This document shows positions 41,823-59,669 of a stretch of 64,000 nt of DNA, in pieces. A program made the position numbers and the translations under genes. The notes beneath the pieces were generated by a model. That model was not told the origin of the DNA, did not search any database, and saw only the letters and a list, made by a program, of their open reading frames with translations. The DNA lies in the IMG/VR virus record IMGVR_UViG_3300010334_000023, positions 152,499 to 216,498 of that record; one strand, given 5' to 3'. How positions within the stretch are numbered: position 1 is the first letter of the stretch; the number at the start of each line of letters is the position of its first letter.

Positions 41823-42152
41823 TCATCTGATCTTTGGTTTGCGACCGCGCTTGCGACCAGTGCTGCGAGTAGTGCCGTCTGGATTGATGTTGAATATCTC
41901 GGCATACCTCTGCACGCTCATGCCATCTATGGCAGTAATGTCATCGCTGCTCACTGTCAACTGTCCCTGCCCGTTTGCTTCCTTGAGAGTGAGAGCGAAA
42001 GATCCGCTGTTTTCGACCACGCTGATCAGATGGTAATCATCAGAAGCCTGCTGTGGCCAACCAAATGCGTTCCTGCGACTGATCCTGGCAGTGACCATGC
42101 TGTCCTCACCTAGCTTGCCCTGTGCGATAAGCTCGCTCACGAGGTTGATCAT
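41823..42152 (-). CDS. Hypothetical protein with basic C-terminal tail
   Basis: ATGA-coupled to clpA; ends TGRKRGRKPKIR. Confidence 0.75.
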   Translation of the reverse strand: MINLVSELIAQGKLGEDSMVTARISRRNAFGWPQQASDDYHLISVVENSGSFALTLKEANGQGQLTVSSDDITAIDGMSVQRYAEIFNINPDGTTRSTGRKRGRKPKIR

Positions 42153-44437
42153 TGCGAGACCTCCTGAACCAACTGCAGGTCCTGCGGCTGTGCCGTGTCT
42201 GGCGCAGGTTCTGGATTGCTGAGATATTCAAACTCTAGCTTGTCTTCCTTGACAGTGATCATCACAGCTCCGCCGTGTCGCAGCTTGCCAAACAGCATCT
42301 CTCTGCTCAGTGGCTTCTTGATGTGATCGGCGATCACTCTGGCCAAGGGACGCGCACCCATGTTGGTGTCAAATCCCTTGTCGATCAGCCACTGCTTGGC
42401 AGAAGCATCGCAGACTATCTTGACGTTCTTGCGAGCACTCAGACCATTGAGCTCGCCGAGGAACTTGTCAACGATGCTGTCCATGTTGTCCTTGTTCAGC
42501 TTGTTGAACTTGATGATGGCATCCAGCCTGTTGCGGAACTCTGGTGTGAAGAAACGGTTGATGGCCTGCGTGTCCTCGTCTCGCACAGTGCTCTTGGTGA
42601 AGCCGATCAGTTCCTTTTCCATGTCAGCTGCACCCAGATTGCTGGTGAAGATCACGATGGCATTGCGTGCGCTGGCTGATTTTCCTTGGCTGCTGGTCAC
42701 TGTGCCATGATCCATCAGCGCAAGGAAGATGTTGTAGACGTCGGGATGTGCTTTTTCGATCTCGTCGAACAGCAGCACGCAGTGAGGATGCGTGTCAAGC
42801 TCATTGATCAGCACGCCGCCGCCGGCACCACCGTCACCGTAACCAACGTAACCCGGAGGTGATCCGATGAACTTGCTGACTGTGTGACGCTCTTGGTACT
42901 CGCTCATGTCAAATCTGGCAAAATGCACGCCTAGGCTCTTGGCCAACTGCTTGGCAACTTCGGTCTTGCCCACACCACTGGGCCCTGAGAACAGGAAGCT
43001 GCCCACGGTCTTGTCGCTCTCGCGCAGTCCGCTCCTGCTCATGTAGATGGCGTTGACCACTCCGTCGATGGCATCGATCTGTCCAAATATCTTGGCTTTG
43101 AGATCAGTCTCTAGCTGTTCTAGCTTGTCAGCTTCCTTGCTCTTTACCGTGGTCACAGGTACCTTGGCTACTCTGCTGACTTCGGCTTCGATCATTTCCT
43201 TGGTCAATAGCTTGGCACGTTCTGATGCTGGTTTGATCCTCTGCCATGCTGCTGCGCTGTCCACGATGTCGATGGCCTTGTCAGGCAAGCATCTGTCGTG
43301 TATGTGCTTGGTAGTGAGTTCCACTGCAGCATCCAAGGCTTCTGGTTCAAACTCGATACCATGGTACTCTTCGTAGTGCTTGGCGATACCTCTGAGTATG
43401 CGCTTGCTGTCCTCAACGCTGGGTTCGAACACGTCCAGCTTTTGGAATCGCCGCACCAGCGCACGGTCCTTTTCAAAGTGCTTGCGATATTCCTCGTTGG
43501 TGGTGCTGCCGATGCAGCAGATCTCGCCGCGGCTCAGCGCAGGCTTTAGCATGTTAGCTGCGTCGATGCTGCCACCGCCTCCGCCATTGCCTGCACCCAT
43601 GATCATGTGTATCTCGTCGATGAACATGATGGTCTTTGGCAGCGCTGAGAACGCTGCGATGATCTGCTTGAGACGCTCTTCAAAATCACCTCTGAACTTG
43701 GTACCTGCTACCAACGTGGCCACATCAAGGTTCCAGATGGTGTGATCGGCTAAGCTGTCTGGTACATCCCCTTCGATGATGCGCCGAGCCAAGCCTTCTA
43801 CTATGATGGTCTTGCCCACACCGGGATCGCCGGTCATGATCACGTTATGCTTGTTGCGGCGTGCCATGATCTGGCAGATCTGTTCAACTTCCTTCTCACG
43901 GCCGATCAGAGGATCTATGCGGCCTGCCTGTGCCTTGGCATTGAGATTGATGCAGTATTCCTCGAGTATCTCAAGAGCTGCTTTGCTGTCCATGGCCGAA
44001 TCTGGGCTGTTATCGGTGCGATTGGCTAGCTCGACTAGCTTTTCCTTGGTTGGACCATGCTTCTCCAAAAACCAACTAGCTGGGCTGTCTGGTATGTGAT
44101 ACAGTGCTAGCAACACGTCCACCGCACCTATGTCACCGCGACCGCTGAACAGGCTCTGTGTCTTGGCCTTCTTGATCACGTTGCTGAGCAGCGCTGTATG
44201 CCGAGGCTGGAAGCTGCCTGCCTTGACCACGACATGGTTGCGCTCGTTGTTCAACCACTCGCTGGTCAGAGTGATCAGCTTTTCCAGATCGCCCCCACCT
44301 TGTACCATGAGATCCTGTATGGGTTCCATCTCCAGCAGTCCTGCCAGCAGATGCTCAAGCGTTACCAGCTCGTGGTTAAGGCTAGCAGCCAGTTGATAAG
44401 CACGCTGCAGTGGTTGTTCAAAAGCCTGCATGCTCAT
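42149..44437 (-). CDS. clpA: ATP-dependent Clp protease ATP-binding subunit ClpA
   Basis: Clp-N (TLEHLL); AAA1 GDPGVGKT, FIDEIH, LVRRFQ, LPDKAID; AAA2 GPSGVGKTE, RFDMSEY, LFDEIEKAHPD, FTPEFRNRLD, MGARPL; no ClpB M-domain; 762 aa. Confidence 0.9.
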   Translation of the reverse strand: MSMQAFEQPLQRAYQLAASLNHELVTLEHLLAGLLEMEPIQDLMVQGGGDLEKLITLTSEWLNNERNHVVVKAGSFQPRHTALLSNVIKKAKTQSLFSGRGDIGAVDVLLALYHIPDSPASWFLEKHGPTKEKLVELANRTDNSPDSAMDSKAALEILEEYCINLNAKAQAGRIDPLIGREKEVEQICQIMARRNKHNVIMTGDPGVGKTIIVEGLARRIIEGDVPDSLADHTIWNLDVATLVAGTKFRGDFEERLKQIIAAFSALPKTIMFIDEIHMIMGAGNGGGGGSIDAANMLKPALSRGEICCIGSTTNEEYRKHFEKDRALVRRFQKLDVFEPSVEDSKRILRGIAKHYEEYHGIEFEPEALDAAVELTTKHIHDRCLPDKAIDIVDSAAAWQRIKPASERAKLLTKEMIEAEVSRVAKVPVTTVKSKEADKLEQLETDLKAKIFGQIDAIDGVVNAIYMSRSGLRESDKTVGSFLFSGPSGVGKTEVAKQLAKSLGVHFARFDMSEYQERHTVSKFIGSPPGYVGYGDGGAGGGVLINELDTHPHCVLLFDEIEKAHPDVYNIFLALMDHGTVTSSQGKSASARNAIVIFTSNLGAADMEKELIGFTKSTVRDEDTQAINRFFTPEFRNRLDAIIKFNKLNKDNMDSIVDKFLGELNGLSARKNVKIVCDASAKQWLIDKGFDTNMGARPLARVIADHIKKPLSREMLFGKLRHGGAVMITVKEDKLEFEYLSNPEPAPDTAQPQDLQLVQEVSQ

Positions 44438-44940
44438 GCTGTGACTCCCTGGCGCTTGACCTTCTTGGCCAGCTTGCGCCGTGCTAGATCCAAGCGCAGC
44501 TTGCTTACCCTGTCGTCGATCATGATGCCCTGTAGATGATCAAACTCATGCAGGAATATCCTGCTCCATCCAAAGCCCATGTCAGTGATCTGCTGGTTGC
44601 CAGTGATATCTCTGAACATGACCTTGATCTGCTTGCTGCGCTTGACCTTGAGAACCAAACCTGGCAGGCTAAGGCAGCCTTCATCATGTTCATCAGTCTC
44701 GTCGCTGGCACTGAGCACCACGGGATTGATGAACACTGCGTCCTGGCCTTCCACGCTGACCACGAACAGGTTGATGCTGTGCCCTACCTGTGGCGCAGCC
44801 AACCCAACTCCTCCGTGCGCCCGCAGCGTGTCAAACATGTCTTGGATCAGTGGACCCAGAGATGGAATCTCACTGGGTTCTATCAAGCGTGCTTGCTGCC
44901 GCAGCAGTGCTGCTGGACTGGTCACTAAGGGTAGTATCAT
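44434..44940 (-). CDS. def: Peptide deformylase
   Basis: GVGLAAPQVG, EGCLS and HEFDH all present. Confidence 0.95.
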   Translation of the reverse strand: MILPLVTSPAALLRQQARLIEPSEIPSLGPLIQDMFDTLRAHGGVGLAAPQVGHSINLFVVSVEGQDAVFINPVVLSASDETDEHDEGCLSLPGLVLKVKRSKQIKVMFRDITGNQQITDMGFGWSRIFLHEFDHLQGIMIDDRVSKLRLDLARRKLAKKVKRQGVTA

Positions 44941-44944
44941 TGTT

Positions 44945-45829
44945 TTACTGGCTCCTCTGGCTCTGCACTTGCTTGAGCAGATCCCTTTGTTGAGTGGTTA
45001 GATTCCTGCATATCTCTACGTTGAGCCTGAGGAACAGGTCTCCTCTGTGGCGTGCGTTGTTGTGAGCAGGCATGCCTTGGCCTTGAACACGCAGCATGGT
45101 ACCGTGCTGCGTGCCAGCTGGTACGTTTACGCTGAGCTTTTGGCCATCTATGCCCGTGACTTCTTGGTCGGTGCCCAGCATGGCTGCTATGGCATCCACG
45201 TTCAGCACAGCATGCAGATGCGGACCATCTCTGTTGAACAACGCATGCTCGCTGATTGACACGGTGACATAGAGATCACCTGGGGGCAGATTGCCCATGC
45301 TGCGGTCGCCGTGACCTTGGAACTTGAGCCTGGTGCCATTCTGCACGCCAGCAGGTATTGAGACATTGATGCTGGTCTGCTGCCCGTTGGCATCAAACTG
45401 CACGGGCACGGTCTTGCCAACAAAGGCATCTTCCAGGGTGATGTTGAGAGTGAACTGCCAATCTCTGTTACGAGGCGGCTGCGGTCTGCCAAAGCCCTGC
45501 CCGAACACCTGGCTCATGATGTCATCGAATGGATTGCCACCTCCGCCAAAGCTGAAACTGAAATCCGCACCAGGAAATCCGTGGTTGAAGTTTTGATGGA
45601 AGGGATTGCCTCCCTGTCCAAACCTGCGCTGTTGATCGTACTGCGCACGTTTCTGGGCATCGCCCAGCGTGTCATTGGCCTCGTTGATCTTCTTGAACAG
45701 GGCCTCTGAATCCTTGTTGCCCTGGTTGAGATCAGGGTGATGCTGCTTGGCTAATCGCCTATAAGCAGCTCTGATTTCGTCTGGACTGGCGTTTTCGCCT
45801 ATTTCGAGTATCTTGTAATAATCTTCCAT
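44945..45829 (-). CDS. dnaJ: DnaJ-class (type II / CbpA-like) co-chaperone
   Basis: DYYKILE...HHPD J-domain; G/F-rich linker; C-terminal PGDLYV...GDL; no Zn finger. Start reassigned to 45829. Confidence 0.9.
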   Translation of the reverse strand: MEDYYKILEIGENASPDEIRAAYRRLAKQHHPDLNQGNKDSEALFKKINEANDTLGDAQKRAQYDQQRRFGQGGNPFHQNFNHGFPGADFSFSFGGGGNPFDDIMSQVFGQGFGRPQPPRNRDWQFTLNITLEDAFVGKTVPVQFDANGQQTSINVSIPAGVQNGTRLKFQGHGDRSMGNLPPGDLYVTVSISEHALFNRDGPHLHAVLNVDAIAAMLGTDQEVTGIDGQKLSVNVPAGTQHGTMLRVQGQGMPAHNNARHRGDLFLRLNVEICRNLTTQQRDLLKQVQSQRSQ

Positions 45830-45834
45830 GACAG

Positions 45835-45864
45835 AGTGTAACCTATTGAGCACCATGGTGTCAA
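45835..45864 (-). promoter_or_regulatory. Sigma70-like promoter TTGACA-N18-TACACT (dnaJ-def-clpA, probably leaderless)
   Basis: ATG 5 nt after the -10 box; no SD. Confidence 0.45.
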
Positions 45865-45879
45865 TGCCAGCGGCATACC

Positions 45880-45886
45880 ATAAATA
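45880..45886 (+). promoter_or_regulatory. Late promoter motif ATAAATA
   Basis: Upstream of the holin-like gene, divergent from dnaJ. Confidence 0.55.
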
Positions 45887-45921
45887 ATCAAATATCACCA
45901 ACTAGCAAGGGGTGCAGTGTC

Positions 45922-46611: not shown

Positions 46612-46670
46612 TATATTTAGGCAAAGCTGGATCGTGATCCATAAAATAACACAGTCAAGGGATCACATGC

Positions 46671-47381
46671 ATGCACATACTCATACCCATGAGCGGGCGA
46701 GGTTCTAGGTTCGCCCAGCAGGGTTACGCAAAACCCAAACCTCTGATAGAATTCTTCGGCAAGCCAATGGTCCAGCATGTGCTGGAGAACCTTGGACTGC
46801 ACAATACATTTACACTATGCGTGCTGCGCGAGCACTATGATGCAGATCCTGTGCTGTTTGAACAGCTAGGTCGCATGACTGATCTCAATTTAGTGTTTGT
46901 GGACCAGGTCACACAGGGTGCTGCTGAGACCTGCTTGCTGGCCAAGCAACATATAAAACCCAATGATACTCTGTTCATTGCCAACTGCGATCAGATCATG
47001 GCCTGGGACCAAGATCACTTTGAAGAATGGTTAGCAGCTGAGCGACTGGATGGTGCCATGCTGACCTTCTTCAAGGACAGTCCAGCCTACAGCTATGTGG
47101 AAGTCGACCAAGGCGGCATAGCCATACGCACGGCTGAAAAGCAGGTCATAAGCCCGCATGCTACCACTGGCATCTACGTGTGGACCCAAGGCAAGGATTT
47201 CGTGTGGGCAGCAGAACAGATGATAGCAGACAACGTGCGTGTCAATAATGAATTCTATGTTTGCCCTGTGTATAATTGGAACATCGCACGCGGCGACCGC
47301 ATAGGCATATATCCACCCCAGGCTCACTGGCCCATAGGCACACCAGAAGACTTGGACATCTACATAGAGGCGCACCAATGA
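46671..47381 (+). CDS. Sugar-phosphate nucleotidyltransferase (NTP_transferase family)
   Basis: LIPMSGRGSRF...PKPL; TQGAAET; IANCDQ; AEK; NEFYV; GTPEDL. Confidence 0.85.
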   Translation: MHILIPMSGRGSRFAQQGYAKPKPLIEFFGKPMVQHVLENLGLHNTFTLCVLREHYDADPVLFEQLGRMTDLNLVFVDQVTQGAAETCLLAKQHIKPNDTLFIANCDQIMAWDQDHFEEWLAAERLDGAMLTFFKDSPAYSYVEVDQGGIAIRTAEKQVISPHATTGIYVWTQGKDFVWAAEQMIADNVRVNNEFYVCPVYNWNIARGDRIGIYPPQAHWPIGTPEDLDIYIEAHQ

Positions 47382-47710
47382 AAGTATTTGATCCCACGCT
47401 GTTCACAGGTGGTTGGTTCGTTGGAGACTTCCAACCCAGCATCTGGAACACCAAGGACTTTGAAGTAGGTTACAAGTATCATCAGGCCGGCGAACCATGG
47501 CCAGCTCACTATCATGAGCACATGGACGAGATCACCGTTTTGGTAGATGGCGTGATGAGGATACAGGACCAGATCCTGGTTGGCCCGACCATATTCCTGC
47601 TGAAAAAGGGCGAGATAGCAGATCCAGAATTCCTAGCAGATTGCCAAGTGGTGGTGATCAAGACTCCCAGCGTGCCTGGCGACAAGATAGAGGTGAAAAA
47701 AGAATCATGA
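47378..47710 (+). CDS. Cupin-fold protein (putative sugar isomerase/epimerase)
   Basis: GWFVGDF; PAHYHEHMDEIT (H-x-H-x4-E cupin motif 1); ATGA-coupled on both sides. Confidence 0.75.
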   Translation: MKVFDPTLFTGGWFVGDFQPSIWNTKDFEVGYKYHQAGEPWPAHYHEHMDEITVLVDGVMRIQDQILVGPTIFLLKKGEIADPEFLADCQVVVIKTPSVPGDKIEVKKES

Positions 47711-48849
47711 GCATAGACATCGTCAGAGACCAAAAGGAACTGGGTACCTATTTCTACGTTACCTACGACGTAGAAAGCACCAGCACGCTGTTTGACGCAG
47801 CATGGGCCATAGCAGTGGGCCAGAGCATTGGCAATCCCAACACACGGTCAGTCTGGGAGACACCAGAGATGATCGAAGCACACTGTGCCAAGATCCTGCG
47901 CAGCAACAACTTTGACAAGAAGAAGGGTTTGGTCACCATTGGTTACCCAGCTGCCAACATCAACTGGGACAACGATGGCATCGCTCAGCTGCTGTGCATC
48001 ATCCAGGGCGGCCAGACTGACATTGACATCATCAAGAAGTGTCGCGTGGTTGATCTTGAGATACATCCCCAGACCATAGACAGCCACTTCAACAAGCCAC
48101 GCTATGGCATCAGTGGCATGAGGGCCTACACTGGCTGCTTTGGCAAACCGTTCTTTGGAGGCATCATCAAGCCCAAGACCGGCGTAACACCTCATCAGCT
48201 GCTAGACATGGTCAAGGAACTGGTTGATGGCGGCGTTAACTTCATCAAGGAAGACGAGATCCTCAGCAATCCAGACATCTGCAGGCTGGAAGATCGCGTG
48301 AGCTTGATCAGTGATTACATCAGCGACAAGAGCGTGGTATATACCTTCTGCATCAACAGCGATCCTCTGCATGTGCTGGATCGCGCACGTTTCGTGGCCA
48401 GCAATGGCGGCACAGGGGTGCACGTGAACGTGTGGAGCGGTCTTGGCGTGTACAAGAGCATACGCGATCTGGATCTGGATCTGTTCATACACTATCAGAA
48501 GAGCGGTGACAAGGTCATCACGCATAAGAAGAATCCTTTTGGCATAGAGTGGACTGTGCTGTGCCAGCTGGCAGCTATCAGCGGTGTTGACACCATACAC
48601 GCAGGCATGTGGGGTGGCTACCTATCGGATCCCGAAGACGAGATCACTGCGTACATGAAAGTTCTCAGAAGCGGCAACGTGGTTCCTGCGCTAAGCTGCG
48701 GTATGACAGCAGAGCTGATCCCACCAATCGTGGAAAAGTTTGGTGTGGACTGGATGGCCAACGTGGGCGGCGCCATACACGGTCATCCAGATGGCACGCT
48801 GGCAGGTGCACAGAAGATACGCCGAGCCATAGACAGCTTGAAGGTGTGA
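47707..48849 (+). CDS. RuBisCO-like protein (form IV RLP)
   Basis: GGIIKPKTG (K175/K177); NFIKEDE (K201, D203, E204); IHYQKSG (H294); IHAGMWGGYL; ALSCG; VGGAIHGHP. Lacks E60, R295 and K334 equivalents. Confidence 0.9.
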   Translation: MSIDIVRDQKELGTYFYVTYDVESTSTLFDAAWAIAVGQSIGNPNTRSVWETPEMIEAHCAKILRSNNFDKKKGLVTIGYPAANINWDNDGIAQLLCIIQGGQTDIDIIKKCRVVDLEIHPQTIDSHFNKPRYGISGMRAYTGCFGKPFFGGIIKPKTGVTPHQLLDMVKELVDGGVNFIKEDEILSNPDICRLEDRVSLISDYISDKSVVYTFCINSDPLHVLDRARFVASNGGTGVHVNVWSGLGVYKSIRDLDLDLFIHYQKSGDKVITHKKNPFGIEWTVLCQLAAISGVDTIHAGMWGGYLSDPEDEITAYMKVLRSGNVVPALSCGMTAELIPPIVEKFGVDWMANVGGAIHGHPDGTLAGAQKIRRAIDSLKV

Positions 48850-48850
48850 C

Positions 48851-49324
48851 ATGAAGTTCATAGCACACCGAGGATTGATGGACGGTCCTGATGAGCGCAT
48901 GCAGAACCGCCCTGATCAGATCGTCAAGGCACTGGACCATGGATTCGAAGCAGAGATAGACCTGTGGCATATAGATGGCAAGTGGGTGCTGGGACATGAT
49001 GGTCCTGAGCATGACATCGAATTTGATTACCTCAGGCAGAAGGGCCTGTGGATTCACTGCAAGAACCTCGATGCGCTGTTTGCTCTCAGAGCACAGAAAC
49101 ATCACTACAACTTCTTTTGGCACGAAAGTGATCTAGTGACGCTGACCAGCACCAACATGGTCTGGACTTACTTTGGCAAGCCAGAGACCGTGAGCCCCAT
49201 GAGCATCTGCGTGATGCCGGAAGCTACCTATGAATGGACAGACATAGAGCAGATGGTGCGCAGCTGGAACTGGTATGGCTTCTGCAGCGACTATGTGAAC
49301 CGGCTGCGGGCATGGCAACACTAG
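48851..49324 (+). CDS. Minimal glycerophosphodiester-phosphodiesterase (PLC-like) protein
   Basis: FIAHRG; EAEID; LGHD; WIHCKN; GFCSDY. Confidence 0.7.
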   Translation: MKFIAHRGLMDGPDERMQNRPDQIVKALDHGFEAEIDLWHIDGKWVLGHDGPEHDIEFDYLRQKGLWIHCKNLDALFALRAQKHHYNFFWHESDLVTLTSTNMVWTYFGKPETVSPMSICVMPEATYEWTDIEQMVRSWNWYGFCSDYVNRLRAWQH

Positions 49325-49971
49325 CACTATGCTTTGCGGGATTACCTCGCATAACTGACGTCAGCACTGCTAGCTGGCGTCGCCTCATTGATCAACACGA
49401 CACTGATGTATTCGTGCATGCGTGGAGCAACGATGCTGAACTGTCTCGCAACTGGATCAGCAGTGCGTATGCTCCCACAGAGATGATAATAGAATCTCAG
49501 CGAGAGTTTGATACCAGCATCTACAAGGATCGCATCTGGGCCTATAGGTCGCAGCCACGAAACGTGCTCAGCATGTGGTACAGCATAGCTCAGAGCCTTC
49601 AGCTGGCAGACCGGCACGCACGGAAACAGCGCAAGACCTATGACTTTGTTGCCCGTGCACGATTTGATTGGCACTGTGATCAGTTTGTGCTGGAACAGTA
49701 CGATGGCCTCACAGTGCCAGATGATCCCGGTCTGAGCGGTCACAATTTCCAGCATCGCGGAACATGGCACGTGGCACACAACGATCAGTTTGGATATGGC
49801 AGCATGACTGTGATGCGAGACTACGGAGAGACATTTGCTCGCATACCTTGGCTGTATTCTGTAGATGGTGTCGACTTCTGCAGCGAATTATTCCTCACCA
49901 CTAACATGATGACCAAGCAAATTCCGGTTAAATTACAGAAGGGCATGCGCTATCGCATGGTAAGGGACTAA
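49312..49971 (+). CDS. Putative glycosyltransferase
   Basis: ALCFAGLPR; TDVFVHAW; SMWYS; YDFVARARFD; NDQFGYG; start reassigned to 49312. Confidence 0.6.
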   Translation: MATLALCFAGLPRITDVSTASWRRLIDQHDTDVFVHAWSNDAELSRNWISSAYAPTEMIIESQREFDTSIYKDRIWAYRSQPRNVLSMWYSIAQSLQLADRHARKQRKTYDFVARARFDWHCDQFVLEQYDGLTVPDDPGLSGHNFQHRGTWHVAHNDQFGYGSMTVMRDYGETFARIPWLYSVDGVDFCSELFLTTNMMTKQIPVKLQKGMRYRMVRD

Positions 49972-49972
49972 C

Positions 49973-51043
49973 ATGAAGATAGGTGTATATACGATCGCGT
50001 TAAACGAGCTACAGCACTGCGAACGCTGGGCTCAGAGCGTGGCAGATGCTGACTATCGTGTTGTGCTAGACACGGGTAGCACAGATGGCACGGTTGAGAA
50101 GCTGCGCGAGCTGGGTGTCACTGTGTTTGAACAACGTTTTGATCCATGGCGCTTTGATCATGCTCGCAACGCTGCGCTGGCCTGCTTGCCCACAGACACT
50201 GACATCTGCATCAGCCAGGACATGGACGAGTTCCTTGCTGAAGGTTGGCGACCCAAGATGGAAGCAGCTTGGCGCATGAACGAGACCACACGCTTGGCCT
50301 ATACCTATGTGTTTGATTATCGTGTTGGTGGACCAAATGATGGTTACCGCATGGACAAGATACACGCTAGGATAGGCTATCAATGGAAGCGCCCAGTGCA
50401 TGAGACAGTGTTCAGCACAGTGGGTCTTGAGAATGTTGCCGAAGATCTCAGCATAGTGCTGAACCAGATACAGGATCGCAGCAAGGACACTCGAGGGCGT
50501 TACTTGCCACTGCTGAAGATGGCAGCCGAGGAAGACAGCGACGACAGCCAGATCAGCTTTTGGTATGGCCGCGAGCTGATGTATGCGAACCAACATACCG
50601 AGTCAGTGACAGAGCTTGAGAGATATCTCAGCCTTGAGACCAGTAGGTGGCCCATAGAGCGTTCAGAAGCCATGATATACATCAGCAGGATGAGCGACAG
50701 CCGCAAGCTGGAATATCTGCAGCGAGCACTGATATGTTCGCCTGAACGCAGGCAGGTGTGGTTAGAGATGGCTCGCTACTATTACAACAACCAGGACTGG
50801 CACGGTCTGCTGTGGGCAGCTGGCAGCGGCATGGAAAAGAGCCGCAGGGATCACAGCTATCTGGACAGTGCAGATGCCTGGGGCAATCAGCTGCTGGACT
50901 TTGGCAGCATAGCTGCTGCTAACCTTGGATGGTACAGCAAGGCAGCTGATTGGTGCCGACAGGCACTGGACATGAGCCCCAGTGACGATAGATTGAAAAC
51001 CAACCTGCAGTGGATGCAGGATAAGATCAAGGGACAAGCATGA
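49973..51043 (+). CDS. GT2 glycosyltransferase with C-terminal TPR repeats
   Basis: VLDTGSTDGT; SQDMDE; WKRPVHE; TPR helices (FWYGRELMY, ALDMSPSD). Confidence 0.85.
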   Translation: MKIGVYTIALNELQHCERWAQSVADADYRVVLDTGSTDGTVEKLRELGVTVFEQRFDPWRFDHARNAALACLPTDTDICISQDMDEFLAEGWRPKMEAAWRMNETTRLAYTYVFDYRVGGPNDGYRMDKIHARIGYQWKRPVHETVFSTVGLENVAEDLSIVLNQIQDRSKDTRGRYLPLLKMAAEEDSDDSQISFWYGRELMYANQHTESVTELERYLSLETSRWPIERSEAMIYISRMSDSRKLEYLQRALICSPERRQVWLEMARYYYNNQDWHGLLWAAGSGMEKSRRDHSYLDSADAWGNQLLDFGSIAAANLGWYSKAADWCRQALDMSPSDDRLKTNLQWMQDKIKGQA

Positions 51044-52104
51044 TGCGCATAGCGATTTACGGACCAACCAAGAACCAAGCTCACCATGTGCAGGCATGGT
51101 ATGATAGCTGCAAGGATGCTGATGTTATCTGCATCGCAGACACTGGCAGCACAGACGGAACCAAGGAAGCCATGTTGGCACTGGGAGTGCAGGTCACGGA
51201 TGTCCGCATCATACCTTGGCGCTTTGACGATGCGTTCAACACTGCGATGTATCTAGTACCAGATGACATAGATGTGTGCATACGCCTGGACACCGATGAG
51301 AGACTGACACCAGGTTGGCGCGACAAGCTGGAAGCAGCTTGGAAGCCAGAAACCACGAGGCTGCGCTATCCCTACATCTGGAACTGGAACGCTGACGGCA
51401 CGCCAGGTCGCCAGTGGTACGGCGATCGCATACACAGCCGCAAAGGCTACCGCTGGATGGGAGCCACGCACGAAGGACTGGTCAGCAGATTACCAGAAAT
51501 ACATACTTTCACAGATGATTTCCAGATACATCACTTCCCAGATCCCAAGAGCAAGAGCGGTGATCTCAGCCTGCTGGAAGAAAGCGTGAGAGAGTGGCCG
51601 CATGATAGCCGCATCAAGGCCTACCTGGGCCGCGAGTATGCTTATCAAAAGATCTGGGACAAGTGCGCAGCTACCTACAAGGAATTCCTCGGTATGAGCT
51701 TTGACACGGTTGAGCGCTGCCAGGCTCTGACCACTCTGGCACAGGCTGAACCCGAGAACAAGCTGTTTTGGCTCAAGCAGGCTGCCTATGAAGTACCCAC
51801 TCATCGCGAACCTTTAGTAGCATTGGCACAGCACTACTATGAAGCAGCAGACTGGAAGAACTGCTACGACTATTCTCATCGCGCTCTCAAGATCACCAAG
51901 CATCCCATGGACTACACCTGCACACCTGAGGCATGGGGATGGCAACCGCATGATCTGCTGAGCATCGCAGCATGGAACCTAAGGCTCTATGACGAATGCT
52001 TGGAACAGGCCAAGACAGCTCTGGAAAAATCTCCAGATGACACGCGACTGAAAAACAATCTCAAGCTGATAGAGGATTTCATAGCCAAGAATCTACGTGG
52101 TTGA
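51040..52104 (+). CDS. GT2 glycosyltransferase with C-terminal TPR repeats (paralogue)
   Basis: IADTGSTDGT; RLDTDE; WMGATHE; YLGREY; ALEKSPDD. Confidence 0.85.
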   Translation: MMRIAIYGPTKNQAHHVQAWYDSCKDADVICIADTGSTDGTKEAMLALGVQVTDVRIIPWRFDDAFNTAMYLVPDDIDVCIRLDTDERLTPGWRDKLEAAWKPETTRLRYPYIWNWNADGTPGRQWYGDRIHSRKGYRWMGATHEGLVSRLPEIHTFTDDFQIHHFPDPKSKSGDLSLLEESVREWPHDSRIKAYLGREYAYQKIWDKCAATYKEFLGMSFDTVERCQALTTLAQAEPENKLFWLKQAAYEVPTHREPLVALAQHYYEAADWKNCYDYSHRALKITKHPMDYTCTPEAWGWQPHDLLSIAAWNLRLYDECLEQAKTALEKSPDDTRLKNNLKLIEDFIAKNLRG

Positions 52105-52395: not shown

Positions 52396-52674
52396 TTAGA
52401 TACGGCTACGTCGGCTAGCTGCCTTGGCATCTTCTTCAGTGGACTCAACTGCGATAGGCACCCAGCGCTGTGGGATTGGTAACCCGCTCTTGCGATAATA
52501 GTCCAAGTCTGCTTCTGGATCATCTACTTGAGTCCATACCACCCATTTACCATCAAGTTCGCGTTTCTTGATATCGTGTCTCTTATCCATCTCTGGTCTC
52601 TTTATGCTATTAAGGGTTACCGGAACATCCCGGCTCTCAAGTTTAGCAGCAACTATAGCTGCTGCCAAATTCAT
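52396..52674 (-). CDS. Hypothetical protein
   Basis: 92 aa, ATGA-coupled to the PRT gene. Confidence 0.7.
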   Translation of the reverse strand: MNLAAAIVAAKLESRDVPVTLNSIKRPEMDKRHDIKKRELDGKWVVWTQVDDPEADLDYYRKSGLPIPQRWVPIAVESTEEDAKAASRRSRI

Positions 52675-53219
52675 TGTGAAGATGCACCTAACCACCAGTT
52701 CTCATAAGGAAACTCGATCCACATATCTTGCTCAGCCTTGTTGATTTCCATGGCTGCGTAATCTACCTTGGTAGTGCTAGCTAGATTGTTAACCAACACA
52801 GCAAAGCGCACGTTGTGGTGCCAGATATTATCCCAGTGTGAGCTGTCTGGTAAGCAGGTACTGCGCCAATCGCGTTTGATCCATTCCAGAGTGGCACCTG
52901 TGTCATTGATGTCGTCTACGATCAAGATCTGCTTTGGAGGATTACCCTCAGTTGGAAACTTCTCATCATAGCCAAACGCATCTTCTGCCATCCACCAATT
53001 GCTTTCATTGTCAGCACCATTGTCGCGCAAGCTCACTCGCAGTGTATGGCAAGGCACAGCAAACCAATGGCTTAGCAGCACAGCAGGCAGCAACCCACCT
53101 CGAGTAAGTCCAACGATGTAGTCTGGACGCCAGCGATCAATAGTTACCTGTCGAGCTATTGATAACACTTGCGAATTTACGTCTTTATAGCTGAGATATC
53201 GCTTGTTGATCATAGGCAT
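52671..53219 (-). CDS. Type I phosphoribosyltransferase (Gpt/Hpt-like)
   Basis: IVGLTRGGLLPA; ILIVDDINDTGATL PRPP-binding motif; WIEFPYE. Start is 53213-53234 (uncertain). Confidence 0.85.
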   Translation of the reverse strand: MPMINKRYLSYKDVNSQVLSIARQVTIDRWRPDYIVGLTRGGLLPAVLLSHWFAVPCHTLRVSLRDNGADNESNWWMAEDAFGYDEKFPTEGNPPKQILIVDDINDTGATLEWIKRDWRSTCLPDSSHWDNIWHHNVRFAVLVNNLASTTKVDYAAMEINKAEQDMWIEFPYENWWLGASSQ

Positions 53220-53237
53220 GTTTCCCATTACCATGCC

Positions 53238-55493: not shown

Positions 55494-58400
55494 ATGGCAA
55501 TAGACCCTAATACCATCGATACCCAGTTTCCTGTCGCTAATCAAGACAATGATAGCCAGGGATTTAGGAACAATTTCTCGGCTATCCAAGAGAACTTCAT
55601 ACAGGCCAACGCAGCAATAAGCAGCCTGCAGGCCACCACGATAGGTTTAGCCGGACCGGTATACACGCCAATAGCCAGCAATCTAACATCTGGATCAGTC
55701 ACGCTGATCACGGAATTCCAGACCAGCTCAGGCAATTCTACCCTGACCTTCCCTGGTACCAGTGCTGTGGTGTTGCCTGTGGGCAACAGCAGCCAACGTC
55801 CAAACCCAGTGATAGGTCAGATACGCTATAACACTGACACCAATCAGATCGAATATTACAACAGCACCAACTGGTATCCAGTGGGTCCAACAGGTCCCAC
55901 AGGTGCTGACAGTGTCGTAACTGGTCCAACTGGTCCGGCCAATGGTCCTACCGGACCTACTGGTCCGCTGGGCCTGCAGGGTGTGCCTGGACAGCAAGGG
56001 TTCCCAGGCATACCAGGACCAACTGGTCCAACTTCCGTGATCACTGGACCAACTGGTTACACAGGTCCCACATCTAACATATCTGGACCAACTGGCCCAA
56101 CTGGCATCACCGGACCAACAGGTCCCACTGGTGCAACAGGCCCTACTGGCTACACTGGTCCCACAGGTCCCACAGGTGAGACTGGTCCAACTGGACCAAC
56201 TGGTATCACTGGACCCACGGGCATAGGCATACCAGCTCCGCCCGTGCGCAGCGTGCAGTTCAATGCTGGTAGCAATGTGTTTGGTGGCAGCAGCCTCTTT
56301 ACCTGGGGCACCGACAATGTGCTCAACGTCAACAGCATACTGAGCCAGAACACCCAGATCGTTAATGATGTGATACGCAATAGGTTGGCCTCGGCTAATC
56401 TCGTGCTACAGACACCTGTTGACGGCGGCGTCTACGTGAGCAACGATTTCTATGTGCAGGGCATATCACACAGGACAGCACCACACGTCACTGGCGTGAT
56501 GTACGTGACCGTGGACGGTGACGATGCCAACACTGGCTTGGCAGAAGATCGCGCCAAGCGTACCATAGCCAGCGCTTGCTCAGCAGCAGCACAGCTCATA
56601 GCCAATCCCAGCACGCCTTGGATATACTGCACTATATATGTGCGGGCGGGTGTGTATACCGAGCCAAATCCCATATTGGTTCACAGCGGCATCACGGTGT
56701 TTGGCGATAACCTACGTTCTGTTACCGTGACTCCGCTCAATCCAACATTGGACATATTCTGGCTCAACCCCAAGACATATCTCTATGGCATGACATTCCG
56801 TGGCCATCAGTATCCTGCTGCAGCTGTGCAGTTTCCAGAGAATGGAACCACTGTTATACATGAACTGCATGACTGGGCGTCTCCATACGTGCAGAACTGC
56901 TCAAGCATCACCCTGGGCAAGTATCAAGGCAACGTGCAGATAAGCGAAGCTGGCACTGGTATGATCGTGGACGGTGTTCGTGGTCGCAAGCTCAGTGCGC
57001 CAGATTTTGGCAACGTGATAGTACCGACCATGACCACATGGACCAGCGGCAACACCGCAGTGTTCTATCAAGCCTACGCACCAACCTGGAGTGGTAACGT
57101 GGCAGTGGGTTGGCTAGCTCAGAGCGGCATCGAAGGCAGCCCTGCGGTGGTGACCAGCGTTGGTACAACTACCATTGACGGCAACCCAGCCTACACTTAC
57201 TCGCTAGACGAGTTTGACTACAATACCGTAGACATATATACCTTTGACAACGTGCTGACCAGCACTAGTGCTATCATACTCAACAACACCAGCCCGGGAT
57301 TTGGTGACACGGTGGTTGGGGGATGGTATATGCAGAGTCCTGCCTATCCAGGCTTTGTCAACGCATACACGCTGTTGCGAGCCAACATACCATTCATACA
57401 GGCACAGGTAGTAGCCTACATGCAGGCTGAATTTGGCTATCCTGCCACCAGCACTAGTGCCAGAGATATCGGATACATAACCGATGCAGTTTGCCGCGAT
57501 CTCCTTGCCAGCAACTATGACCTAGCGCTGCAGGCAGGAGAATATTTCTGGACTGAGACAGCAAATGGTCCGGTCAGCGTGCTACCTCCCAGCAGCATAG
57601 CTATCTGCCTAGCTGGCATACAGTTTGCTAGCCAAATAGCACAGACCGCGATTACCAATACCAGCTTCGCTCCTGTATATGATCCCGGAACTCCGCAGGT
57701 TTTCTACGTCTATCTAGGCGACAGCGGTAGAATAGCTGTGACCACCGTGGCTACCAACTACAACATAGTGCTTGAAATCATTCAGAACGGCCCATATAAC
57801 AATCCGCTTGCCAACGGCCAGAGGCTCATGGAGAGCAACAGGCTATTCGCACAGAACGAAGTGGTAGCATACGTAAACACCCTGTATCCGGACACGTTAT
57901 ATAACGCTACTCTGCAGGCTCAGTGCTATCGTGATGTTGGTTATCTCTGGGATGCTATTACCTATGATACCTATCATCTAGGCAATGCTCAGAGCGTGAC
58001 AGATGCGCTGTTCTACTGGGATGGCGCCACATCGCGCATACCAGGCGAGATACCACAGACTGTGAATGCTTTTATCTATGCCAATCAATTGGCCATTAAC
58101 GTGCTCAACAACACACAGACTGCTCCGTTATATCAGAGCAACATAGCTCAGGTCATAGACAACACGCTGGTTGGTGGCAACGTGGTGGTACAGTATGTGA
58201 ATCAACTGTTTGCCTACGTTGAAGACATCGTGGCCAATGGGGCAGGAGCTGCACCCGTGATGTATAACACCACGGGACCTGGCACGCCAATAAGCAGCGT
58301 GACCTATCAGCCAGGTTACGATAGCATGAACGGTAACAATGCTTGGCTCATAGAGTTCGCTGGCCCCATACCCGGCACAAGCTGGCCATATCCGCTGAGC

Positions 58401-59669
58401 AATCCAAACCTCACATATCCGATCTACAACCTGGTGTTCACCAGCCAGGGTGGACCATTTACCTTCGTGCCATTCAAGAGCACGCTGCCCTATCGCGGAC
58501 AGGGCCTGAACAGCATGGTGCTTGATGCATTCACTCAATACAACGAGATAGGCTACACTCCCGTGCCAGTGCCTCTGGGAACCGTTGACAACAACGCTCT
58601 GAACCATGGTGGTAACGGCATAGTGATCAAGAACGGTGGCTACGCTCAGCTGGTTTCGATCTTTGAGATCTGCTGCAACATCGGAGTCATCTGCCAAAGC
58701 GGTGGCACCTGTTCCATAACCAACTCAAACACTGACTTTGGCAACTATGGCCTCTGGGCCGATGGTATGAGCGATGAACAATACGTCTGCAACATAGATA
58801 ACACAGCAGTACCTGCGGGATTCACTAATGGTACCGCAGGGCTGTGGTACGTGAACAACCTACCTCTGTTCAATGCCGCAGCACCTAACCAGGGCTATGT
58901 GCGACCCTATGTGGGGCAGGTGTGCTATGTTGGTCAGCTCTACTATTACATACAAGCAGCTAACGTCACCGTGGGTGGCAGTGGGTACATAGCACCGCCC
59001 AGCATATCAATAAACCTAGACAGCACACAATATCAGGCTTTCATATTGGCAGGTGGTACCATTGCGCAGGCGCAGCCAATAATGGCCCTAGACGGTGGCA
59101 GCTATCTGGGTTCTCCTACCTATTACGTTGAACAGGTCAGCATCATAGTAAGCGGTAGCCAATACACGGCTTTGGACCTAGCTAAACCTGACTTCTTTGT
59201 GTTCAGCGCGCCAGAGAACCCAGGTGGTACAACCGCAGCAGCAACGCCAATAGGCTACCCGATCTACTACACGATTACCTACGGCACAAGCACAGGTAGC
59301 GGACAAGGCACTGTAGTGCTCGATGAGAACTTACCATATGTTCCGGTCAACGGTGCTCCCATGCACATGTTCCAAGTCAGCAGGATCATCACCAGCAGCC
59401 ACTGCATGGAATACGTGGGATCGGGTACTGATATCGCCAAGTGCATACCGGCAAGAACCAGCAGCCTAGCAGGCAATGCACCTGATCAAACACATGAAGT
59501 GGTGATGACCAACGGCGGCAGGGTAGCATATACCACTACTGACCACCTTGGTAACTTCAGGATCGGACCCGAATTGGTGATAAATCAAAACACAGGTACG
59601 CTGTCTGGACGCACGTTCCAGAAGAGCCTGTTCGCAATTATGACGCCATATATACTGGCGCTACAATGA
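55494..59669 (+). CDS. Virion fibre/tailspike-like protein: N-terminal anchor, Gly-Pro-Thr collagen stalk, pectate-lyase-like beta-helix
   Basis: About 110 aa of GPT repeats (55880-56220); [22 protein letters not shown] and GDNLRSVTV resemble beta-helix entry motifs; late promoter. Confidence 0.7.

What the first reader, a model, noticed from the sequence alone, without database searches (positions are those of the whole stretch)
46671..52104. Sugar-nucleotide operon built around a RuBisCO-like protein in a phage-type genome
Seen: seven tightly coupled genes (ATGA overlaps or 1-nt gaps) in the order nucleotidyltransferase, cupin, RLP, mini-GDPD, putative GT, GT2-TPR, GT2-TPR. Established: characterised RLPs act in methionine salvage or in catabolism of branched sugars such as apiose, through enediolate chemistry on ketose phosphates. 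I know of none placed in an anabolic sugar-activation/transfer operon. Inference: the cupin and RLP isomerise or rearrange a sugar phosphate into an unusual (possibly branched or shortened) monosaccharide or polyol phosphate. The NTP transferase would then activate it and the GTs transfer it, with the GDPD recycling a phosphodiester. This is the best candidate in the window for an undescribed pathway.
Basis: partly seen in the sequence, partly recalled or inferred. Interest (0 to 1): 0.9.

Follow-up and report, generated by a model that had tools for sequence, protein, structure and literature searches.

The report
RuBisCO-like enzyme in phage sugar-activation operon
A large phage carries a seven-gene operon in which a distinct RuBisCO-like enzyme sits next to a sugar-activating enzyme. 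The same enzyme pairing recurs in hundreds of phages and in SAR11, Legionella and tiny archaea, pointing to an undescribed sugar-building pathway whose chemistry has not been tested.

Summary
Seven translationally coupled + strand genes at 46671-52104 encode an NTP-transferase, a small metal cupin, a RuBisCO-like protein (RLP), a minimal GDPD-fold protein, a GT-A-fold protein and two GT2-TPR proteins. They lie on a 216-kb IMG/VR phage contig.

The conserved unit is the first four genes, not all seven. In 59 dereplicated viral loci with this RLP, the NTase lies within 3 kb in 56, the cupin in 52 and the mini-GDPD in 50. In 41 cellular loci (SAR11, Legionella, Nonomuraea, DPANN, CPR) the NTase is adjacent in 39. 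NTase-cupin and RLP-NTase fusions exist.

All 100 RLPs form one clade. They share one active-site pattern: the Mg-carbamate, enolisation and P1 residues are kept, and the carboxylation residues are uniformly replaced. This RLP is therefore neither a carboxylase nor an MtnW enolase.

In cultured cyanophages the same NTase and mini-GDPD occur without the RLP. There the NTase is fused to HAD, RpiB or RibB, so the RLP fills a sugar-phosphate supply slot.

Phage RLPs were reported in 2019 with no function assigned. I found no description of this gene context. The substrate and product remain unknown.

The parts
46618..46647 (+). Weak sigma-70-like promoter match in the 59-nt spacer upstream of g1
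   Evidence: TAGGCA-18-TAAAAT, 9 of 12. This is a consensus match only. No terminator-like site lies on the + strand inside 46671-52104.
46671..47381 (+). g1: sugar-phosphate nucleotidyltransferase (236 aa), the most constant partner of the RLP
   Evidence: Pfam PF00483 at 41.7 bits, above the cutoff of 21.2. PHROG 3980 at 1e-59. The family profile's best PDB hit is 4evw at 4.7e-34, followed by GDP-Man PPases, RmlA, GlmU and HddC. It lies within 3 kb of the RLP in 56 of 59 viral and 39 of 41 cellular dereplicated loci.
47378..47710 (+). g2: small metal-type cupin (110 aa)
   Evidence: No Pfam hit. PHROG 24762 at 2.9e-25. The family profile hits cupins in PDB at 5e-6 to 4e-4, including a 113-aa 'mannose-6-phosphate isomerase'. 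H44, H46 and E51 are invariant. It is fused to the C-terminus of the NTase in about 20 loci. An Atlas cluster holds 196 viral fusions of 350 aa.
47707..48849 (+). g3: RuBisCO-like protein (380 aa) of a distinct NTase-linked clade
   Evidence: Pfam PF00016 at 8.6e-37 and PF02788 at 9.1e-6. No PHROG. Below every NCBIfam cutoff. Clade support is 100 on a branch of 0.91. Kept: K175, K177, K201, D203, E204, H327, S379, G381, G403, G404. Changed in all or nearly all of 100 sequences: N123G, H294Q, R295K, H298D, K334Y, G380C.
48851..49324 (+). g4: minimal GDPD-fold (PLC-like phosphodiesterase) protein (157 aa)
   Evidence: No Pfam hit. PHROG 34507 at 1.5e-21. The profile hits P. furiosus GDPD 7e0v at 8.6e-4 over the HRG..EN..ExD..HD segment. 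AF2 pLDDT 96.6. The Foldseek top hits are GDPDs with prob 1.0 and TMq 0.5-0.62. Invariant: H6, R7, N19, E35, D37, H49, H69, K71, H91.
49312..49971 (+). g5: GT-A-fold putative glycosyltransferase (219 aa; weak DUF7796 match)
   Evidence: DUF7796 at 3.7e-4, below the cutoff. PHROG 13607 at 2.4e-15. AF2 pLDDT 84.7. Foldseek prob 1.0 to retaining GT-A enzymes, namely BoGT6a, GTA/GTB and glycogenin, with TM 0.45-0.51. Present in 15 of 59 viral loci, in the SAR11 islands and in cyanophage islands. Fused to g4 in L039.
49973..51043 (+). g6: GT2 domain plus C-terminal TPR (356 aa)
   Evidence: Pfam GT2 at 23.6 bits (cutoff 23.3) plus TPR hits. PHROG 13126 'beta-1,4-glycosyltransferase' at 4.2e-83. Weak SunS-family hit. 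Found only in the closest relatives of this phage.
51040..52104 (+). g7: paralogue of g6, GT2 plus TPR (354 aa)
   Evidence: Pfam GT2 at 21.7 bits, below the cutoff of 23.3, plus TPR hits. PHROG 13126 at 1.6e-88. Same narrow distribution as g6.

Best explanation
The operon is a phage-borne glycan-building cassette. Its first four genes form a widespread, conserved module.

Proposed working, all inferred:
1. The RLP uses its retained Mg2+-carbamate site, K175 and its P1 phosphate site to enolise a phosphorylated ketose, most likely a pentulose phosphate or bisphosphate related to ribulose-5-P or RuBP. It isomerises or epimerises this substrate and does not carboxylate it.
2. The small metal cupin, which is often fused to the NTase as in bifunctional PMI/GDP-mannose pyrophosphorylases, carries out a further isomerisation.
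3. The NTase joins the product to an NMP, giving an NDP-activated sugar or keto-sugar phosphate.
4. The GT-A-fold g5 protein, and in this phage lineage the two GT2-TPR proteins, transfer it to a glycan or a protein of the infected cell or the virion.

The mini-GDPD handles a phosphodiester or phosphate step tied to the NTase reaction rather than to the RLP, because it accompanies this NTase family with or without the RLP.

Shown: gene identities and folds, the conserved linkage, the fusions, the clade, the active-site pattern, the glycan-locus contexts and the alternative enzymes in the RLP's slot. Inferred: the substrate, the order of steps, the nucleotide and the acceptor.
For: Linkage. In 80 viral loci the NTase is present in 79, the cupin in 72 and g4 in 71, with varying order and orientation. 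After dereplication at 90% identity and within 3 kb, the viral counts are 56, 52 and 50 of 59, and the cellular counts are 39, 15 and 17 of 41.

Fusions. NTase-cupin fusions occur in about 20 loci. An RLP-NTase fusion, P0122 of 667 aa, exists, and an Atlas cluster holds 82 such fusions.

One activity. There is a single clade, and ten catalytic and phosphate-binding residues are conserved (nine invariant, G404 in 98 of 100) while six positions are uniformly replaced across 35-100% identity.

Anabolic glycan context. Neighbours include SDR epimerase/dehydratases, a DegT aminotransferase, sugar O-methyltransferases and GT2; a Wzx flippase, WavE and GT2 in DPANN and CPR; LicD in Legionella; and GT9 plus a CMP-sugar-type cytidylyltransferase in a complete Pelagibacter genome.

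Supply role of the RLP. In cultured cyanophages the same NTase family is fused to RpiB, to RibB/DHBP synthase or to HAD_2. HAD_2 and the RLP are close to mutually exclusive: HAD_2 occurs in 74 of 77 loci without the RLP and in 7 of 83 with it.

NTase type. Its nearest relatives are sugar-1-phosphate NTases.
Against: No biochemical data exist for any member. In Legionella and SAR11 the cupin, and in Legionella also the mini-GDPD, are absent, so they are not obligatory. The RLP could act after the NTase, on an NDP-linked substrate, instead of before it. The RibB fusion, the LicD neighbour and the GDPD fold favour a phosphodiester-type (NDP-alcohol) donor over a glycosyl donor, whereas the NTase's nearest solved relatives favour sugar-1-phosphates. 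The inference of a pentulose substrate rests on analogy with the RpiB, RibB and RuBisCO substrates. The loci were sampled by similarity, so related sequences inflate the counts. Some 'cellular' MAG contigs may be phage DNA.
Confidence: 0.55

Rival explanations
1. The chemistry is the same, but the product is an NDP-alcohol-type donor (NDP-ketose or NDP-polyol phosphate, like CDP-ribitol, CDP-xylulose or CDP-choline). Its phospho-sugar is installed as a phosphodiester-linked decoration, and the mini-GDPD acts on that phosphodiester by transfer, trimming or cyclisation.
For: A g1-type NTase is fused to DHBP synthase in phage S-SKS1, and the DHBP synthase product carries a non-anomeric phosphate. 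A LicD-family phosphotransferase lies directly beside the RLP and NTase in four Legionellaceae. The GDPD fold, with its His/Arg/Glu/Asp/His set conserved, is the most constant companion of the NTase.
Against: At E of 1e-4 or better, the NTase profile finds sugar-1-phosphate NTases in PDB and no LicC, TarI or IspD-type enzymes. The GT-A and GT2 partners are ordinary glycosyl-transfer folds. LicD is confined to the Legionellaceae loci.
Confidence: 0.25
2. The RLP and cupin form a methionine/MTA-salvage unit, unrelated to the flanking sugar genes. This would be either an MTRu-1-P isomerase with a cupin methylsulfurylase, as in Rhodospirillum, or an MtnW enolase with an ARD-like cupin. It would be an ordinary auxiliary metabolic gene pair.
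For: An RLP-cupin gene pair is established in the MTA-isoprenoid shunt (PMC5893883). The Atlas lists RLP-Cupin_2 fusions in Pseudomonadota.
Against: The scores fall far below the MtnW model cutoffs (120.5 against 409, and 95.3 against 513). The partner that is always present is the NTase, not the cupin. Legionella and SAR11 loci lack the cupin. No mtn genes were seen in any surveyed locus. The clade stands apart from its 34 nearest relatives. The position equivalent to N123 is Gly in all members.
Confidence: 0.07
3. The NTase, RLP and mini-GDPD make a soluble small molecule rather than a glycan precursor. In the logic of IspD followed by IspF, NDP activation would be followed by cyclising phosphodiester cleavage. 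The product would serve in takeover, signalling or counter-defence.
For: In most phages the core is only the NTase and a phosphodiesterase-fold protein. The SAR11 islands are small and carry only one GT-like gene.
Against: Across phyla the module is embedded among flippases, GTs, sugar-modifying SDRs, aminotransferases and methyltransferases. A GT-A-fold partner recurs and is fused to g4 in one locus.
Confidence: 0.08
4. The cassette glycosylates phage DNA (a hypermodified base), not a glycan or a protein.
For: Some phages carry NDP-sugar synthesis genes for DNA glycosylation (from general knowledge, not tested here).
Against: The same module occurs in cellular polysaccharide and LPS-type loci. 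No base-hydroxymethylase or DNA-glycosyltransferase neighbour was seen. The TPR-bearing GT2s look like protein- or glycan-directed enzymes.
Confidence: 0.04

Closest known systems
Phage-encoded form IV-like RLP clade of Jaffe et al. 2019 (Mol Biol Evol, PMC6389311)
   Same: Divergent RLPs on large phage contigs from IMG/VR that group with Beckwithbacteria (CPR). In my tree a Beckwithbacteria sequence (L092) sits inside the clade. This is almost certainly the same clade.
   Different: That paper left the function open and does not mention nucleotidyltransferase, glycosyl or neighbourhood context. Found here: the four-gene module, its fusions, its presence in SAR11, Legionella, Nonomuraea, Azospirillum and DPANN genomes, and its RLP-less variants.
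MTA-isoprenoid shunt: DeepYkr RLP (MTRu-1-P 1,3-isomerase) plus cupin MTXu-5-P methylsulfurylase (Rhodospirillum and Rhodopseudomonas; PMC5893883)
   Same: An RLP and a small cupin are encoded side by side. The RLP performs enediolate isomerisation of a pentulose phosphate, and the cupin works on its product.
   Different: That pathway is catabolic salvage with no NTase, GDPD or GTs. Here the NTase is the obligatory partner and the cupin is dispensable. Orthology could not be tested because no reference sequences were available.
Form III RuBisCO of the archaeal/CPR nucleotide-salvage (pentose bisphosphate) pathway
   Same: These are the best sequence matches: P. horikoshii 2cwx at 1.3e-36 and TIGR03326 at 172.6 bits. 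The Mg-carbamate triad, K175, K177, H327 and the P1 glycines are identical.
   Different: N123, H294, R295, H298 and K334 are replaced in all or nearly all members. E60, T65 and W66 are replaced in the window's RLP, and the segment that takes their place (GQSxGNPxxR) is invariant in 39 members. The score is far below the family cutoff of 497. The partners are an NTase, cupin and GDPD rather than AMP phosphorylase and R15P isomerase.
Bifunctional mannose-6-P isomerase / GDP-mannose pyrophosphorylase (ManC/AlgA type; from general knowledge)
   Same: The architecture is an N-terminal NTP_transferase followed by a C-terminal cupin isomerase, as in the g1-g2 fusions. GDP-Man pyrophosphorylases are among the NTase's best solved relatives.
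   Different: The g2 cupin gives no hit to any Pfam family, including the MannoseP_isomer family. It keeps only the H-x-H...E part of the metal motif.
Sugar-nucleotide islands of cultured T4-like cyanophages (S-CAM9, S-8S55, B3/B23, S-SM2, Bellamy, SynMITS9220M01, S-SKS1)
   Same: They carry the same NTase family (26-44% identity), the same mini-GDPD (31-41%), the g2 cupin (35-37%) and g5-like proteins, set among GTs and SDRs.
   Different: They have no RLP. The NTase is instead fused to HAD_2, RpiB or DHBP synthase, or sits with SIS isomerase and class II aldolase genes.

Membership tests
RuBisCO large-subunit superfamily | Significant match to both the N-terminal and the catalytic TIM-barrel domains | tested here: met
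   PF00016 at 127.4 bits (cutoff 30.1) and PF02788 at 26.3 bits (cutoff 20.7). 99 PDB RuBisCO/RLP sequences match at E of 1e-3 or better.
Bona fide RuBisCO (forms I-III, carboxylase) | Full set of catalytic and substrate-binding residues (E60, T65, W66, N123, K175, K177, K201, D203, E204, H294, R295, H298, H327, K334, S379, G380, G381, G403, G404) | tested here: not met
   N123G, H294Q, R295K, H298D, K334Y and G380C hold in the window and in 90-100 of 100 clade members. E60, T65 and W66 are also replaced in the alignment to 2cwx. The TIGR03326 score of 172.6 is below the cutoff of 497.
Bona fide RuBisCO (forms I-III, carboxylase) | Carbamylatable Lys plus Asp/Glu Mg2+ ligands, and the P1 phosphate site | tested here: met
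   K181, D183, E184 (= K201, D203, E204), K155, K157, H298 (= H327), S330, G332 and G354 are invariant, and G355 is kept in 98 of 100. This is why an enolisation-type activity is proposed.
DK-MTP-1-P enolase (MtnW/YkrW RLP) | Score above the curated equivalog cutoffs, and a methionine-salvage gene context | tested here: not met
   NF007095 scores 120.5 against 409, and TIGR03332 scores 95.3 against 513.6. No mtn genes were seen in any locus surveyed.
3-oxo-isoapionate-4-P decarboxylase/transcarboxylase RLPs (OiaC/OiaX, apiose catabolism) | Score above the curated equivalog cutoff | tested here: not met
   NF042437 scores 130 against 700.
DeepYkr RLP (MTRu-1-P 1,3-isomerase) with cupin methylsulfurylase | Orthology to the R. 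rubrum / R. palustris RLP1 and cupin | not testable with these tools
   No reference sequences could be fetched. The adjacency to a cupin is similar. The clade is separated from its 34 nearest unlabelled relatives by a long branch with support 100.
Phage RLP clade (Jaffe et al. 2019) | Phage-borne, divergent from form IV, grouping with Beckwithbacteria sequences | tested here: met
   The window is an IMG/VR phage contig. Beckwithbacteria L092 and Patescibacteria L085 fall inside the viral-rich subclade. The description in the paper matches.
Glycerophosphodiester phosphodiesterase (GDPD, PF03009) for g4 | GDPD fold with the catalytic His/Arg, metal-binding Glu/Asp and second His | tested here: inconclusive
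   The fold is met: Foldseek prob 1.0 to eight or more GDPD structures. The N-terminal HRG..EN..ExD..HD motif is conserved. However, there is no Pfam hit. The protein is about 90 residues shorter than GDPDs, and only the first 50 residues align by sequence. No substrate is known.
Cupin superfamily for g2 | Beta-barrel with the H-x-H-(x)n-E metal motif | tested here: met
   The profile hits PDB cupins at 4.7e-6 to 4e-4. H44, H46 and E51 are invariant in 37 sequences. The structure-based Atlas neighbours are Cupin_2 clusters.
Sugar-phosphate nucleotidyltransferase (PF00483) for g1 | Pfam gathering score and the G-x-G-x-R signature | tested here: met
   41.7 bits against a cutoff of 21.2. G9, G11 and R13 are invariant. 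No NCBIfam equivalog cutoff is reached, so the specificity is unknown.
GT2 glycosyltransferases for g6 and g7 | Pfam PF00535 gathering score | tested here: inconclusive
   g6 scores 23.6 against 23.3, which is marginal. g7 scores 21.7 against 23.3, below the cutoff. Both match PHROG 13126 strongly.
GT-A-fold glycosyltransferase for g5 | GT-A Rossmann-like fold and an acidic metal/nucleotide-binding motif | tested here: inconclusive
   Foldseek prob 1.0 but TM only 0.45-0.51 to GT6 and GT8 enzymes. R117-x-D119 and D111 are invariant. The Pfam DUF7796 hit is below its cutoff.

The most novel reading that the evidence does not exclude
This RLP clade is the committed enzyme of an undescribed nucleotide-sugar (or NDP-keto-sugar-phosphate) pathway. 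The pathway would start from a pentulose phosphate and use only the enolisation half of RuBisCO chemistry. That would be the first anabolic, glycan-building role for the RuBisCO superfamily. The pathway would be shared by SAR11, Legionellaceae, DPANN and CPR organisms and hundreds of large aquatic phages, and would yield a so far unidentified surface or virion sugar.
Probability: 0.4. Interest if true: 0.85.

Novelty: new variant of a known kind. Interest (0 to 1): 0.78.

Why it matters
RuBisCO-like proteins are a classic source of unexpected chemistry, yet only a few functions are known, all in salvage or catabolism. In this clade the genomic evidence (adjacency, fusions, a uniform active site) ties the RLP to a nucleotidyltransferase in glycan loci. 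The function is therefore directly testable with four small soluble proteins. The carriers include SAR11, among the most abundant marine bacteria, and many large aquatic phages. An unknown RLP-dependent surface sugar could matter for phage-host recognition in the ocean and in freshwater. The alternative supply enzymes (RpiB, RibB, HAD_2) beside the same NTase and mini-GDPD also provide natural comparison sets for working out the pathway.

Tried and rejected
- Megablast of the operon against GenBank phages found no match.
- tblastn of the RLP against GenBank phages found no match. The RLP variant is therefore absent from cultured or deposited phages in that collection.
- Single-sequence PDB searches gave nothing useful for g4 and only a marginal hit for g2. 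Family profiles and AF2 models were needed.
- The contig of the RLP-NTase fusion P0122 is only 2.5 kb and gave no context.
- Seven literature searches found the 2019 report of phage RLPs and the RLP-cupin salvage pair. None described an RLP with an NTase, cupin or GDPD.
- I considered and set aside a true carboxylase, an MtnW enolase and OiaX, on residues and model cutoffs.
- I considered and set aside DNA hypermodification and a vestigial, non-catalytic RLP. The latter is contradicted by more than 70 invariant positions.
- I could not fetch labelled reference RLPs, so the tree's outgroups are unlabelled cluster representatives.

Full report
**1. Observation**

The junctions, read from the sequence, are ATGA overlaps at g1/g2, g2/g3 and g6/g7, 1-nt gaps at g3/g4 and g5/g6, and a 13-nt overlap at g4/g5. 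A 59-nt spacer with a weak promoter-like match precedes g1. No + strand terminator-like site lies inside the block.

The window is identical to IMG/VR contig 3300010334_000023, which is 216 kb long. The operon is flanked by tail-fibre genes, a ClpB-like ATPase (PHROG 4871, 1e-246), a peptide deformylase and a DnaJ-like gene. The phage setting is therefore sound.

**2. Gene identities**

| Gene | Identity | Main evidence |
|---|---|---|
| g1 | NTP_transferase | Above the Pfam cutoff. The family profile best matches the uncharacterised V. cholerae NDP-sugar pyrophosphorylase 4evw (4.7e-34), then GDP-mannose pyrophosphorylases, RmlA, GlmU and HddC. |
| g2 | Small metal cupin | No Pfam hit. The family profile finds cupins in PDB. 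H44, H46 and E51 are invariant. |
| g3 | RuBisCO-like protein | Both RuBisCO domains. |
| g4 | Minimal GDPD fold | No Pfam hit. Modelled with pLDDT 96.6. Foldseek returns almost only glycerophosphodiester phosphodiesterases (prob 1.0, TMq 0.5-0.62). The HRG..EN..ExD..HD motif is conserved. |
| g5 | GT-A glycosyltransferase fold | pLDDT 84.7. |
| g6, g7 | GT2 + TPR paralogues |. |

**3. The RLP**

Its best solved relatives are form III RuBisCOs (2cwx, 1.3e-36). It falls far below every curated NCBIfam cutoff: form III 172.6 against 497, OiaX 130 against 700, and MtnW 120.5 against 409.

I aligned 100 dereplicated clade members and used an outgroup that carries all the canonical motifs as the ruler. 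The result:

- Kept: K175, K177, K201, D203, E204, H327, S379, G381 and G403 are invariant, and G404 is kept in 98 of 100.
- Replaced in all 100: N123 to G, H294 to Q, K334 to Y, G380 to C.
- Replaced in most: R295 to K in 98, H298 to D in 90.

My script placed G403 and G404 one column too far. The correct equivalents are G354 and G355.

E60, T65 and W66 are also lost in the window's RLP. The segment that replaces them, GQSxGNPxxR, is invariant in 39 members. So the metal-carbamate and enolisation apparatus and the P1 phosphate site survive, the CO2-addition residues do not, and the distal phosphate site is remodelled.

Such a uniform pattern across 35-100% identity argues for a single conserved activity. 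It is neither carboxylation nor the MtnW reaction.

**4. Neighbourhood in viruses**

At least 106 IMG/VR stretches encode relatives at 48-100% identity. In the 80 loci fetched, the counts are NTase 79, cupin 72, g4 71, g5 21, and the GT2-TPR genes 6. After dereplication at 90% identity and within 3 kb, the counts out of 59 are 56, 52, 50, 15 and 3.

Gene order and orientation vary. The NTase and cupin are fused in about 20 loci, and g4 and g5 are fused in one. Methyltransferase genes (CmcI-, FkbM- and TylF-like) are often inserted between the RLP and g4. SDR epimerase/dehydratases occur in 34 loci, and DegT aminotransferases and GT2 genes also surround the module.

The conserved unit is therefore the four genes g1-g4. 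g5 is a frequent addition. g6 and g7 are specific to this phage lineage.

**5. Cellular genomes**

A scan of GTDB representatives found 50 loci. They include:

- a complete Pelagibacter genome and many SAR11 single-cell genomes;
- Legionella nautarum, L. drozanskii, L. maceachernii and Tatlockia;
- Nonomuraea rosea and Azospirillum oleiclasticum;
- Elusimicrobia;
- DPANN archaea and CPR bacteria, including Beckwithbacteria.

The NTase is adjacent in 46 of the 50 loci.

Contexts are glycan loci:

- DPANN and CPR loci carry a Wzx flippase, GT2, a WavE-like gene, SDRs and methyltransferases.
- Four Legionellaceae loci have a LicD-family phosphotransferase directly upstream of the RLP and NTase.
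- The Pelagibacter chromosome carries a GT9 heptosyltransferase-like gene, a HAD_2-NTase fusion, a 2-hydroxyacid dehydrogenase, g4, the NTase, the RLP and a CTP_transf_3 cytidylyltransferase.
- A second group of SAR11 genomes has a compact island: g4, NTase, RLP, a second NTase and a g5-like gene, flanked upstream by thyX in four of the six and, in four, followed downstream by an Mrp-like ATPase gene.

**6. Phylogeny**

All 100 NTase-linked RLPs (59 viral, 41 cellular) form one clade. SH-aLRT support is 100 on a stem branch of 0.91, apart from the 34 nearest cluster representatives.

With that rooting the deepest branches are cellular: first Legionellaceae, Francisellaceae, Azospirillum, Nonomuraea, Elusimicrobia and Turneriella, then SAR11 with DPANN. 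The viral sequences are nested among them, with CPR and a second SAR11 type mixed in. This suggests that phages acquired the module from cells, followed by further exchange. The root is not secured, and some MAG contigs may be viral.

**7. Fusions**

- RLP-NTase: P0122, 667 aa, scores 588 bits to the clade profile. An Atlas cluster holds 82 such proteins.
- NTase-cupin: an Atlas cluster of 196 viral proteins.

**8. The RLP-less variants**

The RLP has no PHROG and no tblastn match in GenBank phages, but g1, g2, g4 and g5 do. In cultured T4-like cyanophages the same NTase family appears in these forms:

- fused to HAD_2, next to g4 (S-CAM9, S-8S55, B3/B23);
- fused to RpiB and followed by the g2 cupin and a g5-like gene, with g4 directly after in SynMITS9220M01 and about 4 kb downstream in Bellamy;
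- fused to DHBP synthase/RibB, next to a g5-like gene (S-SKS1);
- beside a class II aldolase and a gene annotated as phosphoheptose isomerase, together with g4 (S-SM2).

An NTase-centred scan found at least 587 viral stretches. Of the 80 nearest loci, 74 carry HAD_2, 63 carry g4, 9 carry the cupin and 3 carry the RLP. Of the 80 RLP loci, only 7 carry HAD_2.

The NTase and mini-GDPD pair is therefore the broader core. The RLP (with its cupin), HAD_2, RpiB and RibB are alternative partners. RpiB and RibB use ribulose-5-phosphate, and RuBisCO-family enzymes use pentulose phosphates. From this I infer that the RLP supplies or transforms a pentulose-derived sugar phosphate for the NTase.

**9. Mechanism**

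Best reading, with confidence about 0.55: the RLP performs enediolate isomerisation or epimerisation of a phosphorylated ketose, the cupin performs a further isomerisation, the NTase activates the product, and g5 and the GT2-TPR enzymes transfer it.

The main open alternative is that the donor is of the NDP-alcohol type and the product is phosphodiester-linked. The RibB fusion, the LicD neighbour and the GDPD fold favour this. The NTase's sugar-1-phosphate relatives argue against it.

The salvage reading (RLP plus cupin as in the MTA-isoprenoid shunt) is unlikely. The NTase is the constant partner rather than the cupin, and no mtn genes occur nearby.

The role of the mini-GDPD is unresolved. 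It tracks the NTase rather than the RLP.

**10. Novelty**

Phage RLPs were reported by Jaffe et al. in 2019: about 80 sequences, function unclear, grouping with Beckwithbacteria. Their text contains no mention of nucleotidyltransferase, glycosyl or neighbourhood context for these proteins. Seven full-text searches found no description of the module.

The RLP clade itself is therefore known. New as far as I can tell are its conserved NTase/cupin/mini-GDPD module, its presence in SAR11, Legionella and other genomes, its fusions, and its interchange with RpiB, RibB and HAD_2. No member has been studied biochemically.

**11. Limits**

- Loci were sampled by similarity, so the counts are not phylogenetically independent.
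- The outgroups are unlabelled.
- No RLP structure was modelled.
- The substrate, nucleotide, acceptor and order of steps are all inferred.

Noticed in passing
window 60200-64000 (+ strand): G+C rises to 0.60 here. The region consists of 9-nt-period repeats encoding Gly-X-Thr/Gly-Pro-Thr collagen-like triplets. It probably belongs to a long fibre gene that runs off the window end, directly after the 1391-aa tail-fibre gene at 55494-59669, which has a shorter stretch of the same kind.
   Followed up: partly
window 42149-45901 (- strand): A phage-encoded protein-quality-control cluster lies directly upstream of the operon on the opposite strand. It comprises a ClpB/ClpA-like ATPase (762 aa, 41-49% identical to those of jumbo phages such as Sinorhizobium Phosso and Agrobacterium Atu_ph07), a peptide deformylase and a DnaJ-like protein.
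   Followed up: partly
window 30899-37930 (- strand): A 2343-aa ORF has only weak PHROG hits near its C-terminus. It lies next to tail-fibre genes and is presumably a giant virion or fibre protein.
   Followed up: no
protein P0206: A 583-aa protein joins an N-terminal TIR domain (PF13676, 3.3e-13) to a complete RuBisCO-family protein. This combination is unusual and may relate to defence. It lies outside the clade studied here.
   Followed up: no
proteins P0155 and P0164: Fusions of IF-2B-family isomerase to RuBisCO (726 and 742 aa). They match the isomerase-form III-c fusions already described by Jaffe et al. 2019.
   Followed up: no
L137:6001-7428 (Synechococcus phage S-SKS1, SWZG_00042): This gene is annotated only as DHBP synthase, but it is a fusion of a g1-type nucleotidyltransferase with DHBP synthase. 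That implies an NDP-activated 4-carbon keto-sugar phosphate in a cultured cyanophage. A sugar C-methyltransferase-like gene lies nearby.
   Followed up: partly
L132:3775-4932 and L133:2172-3329 (phages SynMITS9220M01 and Bellamy): These genes are annotated 'phosphatase' but are fusions of an NTP_transferase with RpiB. In SynMITS9220M01 the g2-type cupin that follows is only partly annotated, as a 46-aa ORF.
   Followed up: partly
L048, L049, L055, L061, L064, L065, L067, L072, L076: Nine RLP-module contigs are labelled as giant-virus MAGs (GVMAG) in IMG/VR. All carry the fused NTase-cupin form. Whether they are truly Nucleocytoviricota or mis-binned large phages was not checked.
   Followed up: no
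window 52671-53234 (- strand) and 8851-10245 (+ strand): A phosphoribosyltransferase-like gene (PHROG 8995) lies just downstream of the operon. A radical-SAM-like gene lies elsewhere in the window. Neither is conserved beside the RLP outside the closest relatives.
   Followed up: partly
L118:10876-12908 (Nonomuraea rosea): Downstream of the RLP, cupin, NTase and a GT2 gene lie an S-adenosylhomocysteine-hydrolase-like NAD-binding protein and a deoxynucleoside-kinase-like protein. A phage-type integrase lies upstream. This suggests a mobile island and a possible link to nucleosides.
   Followed up: no
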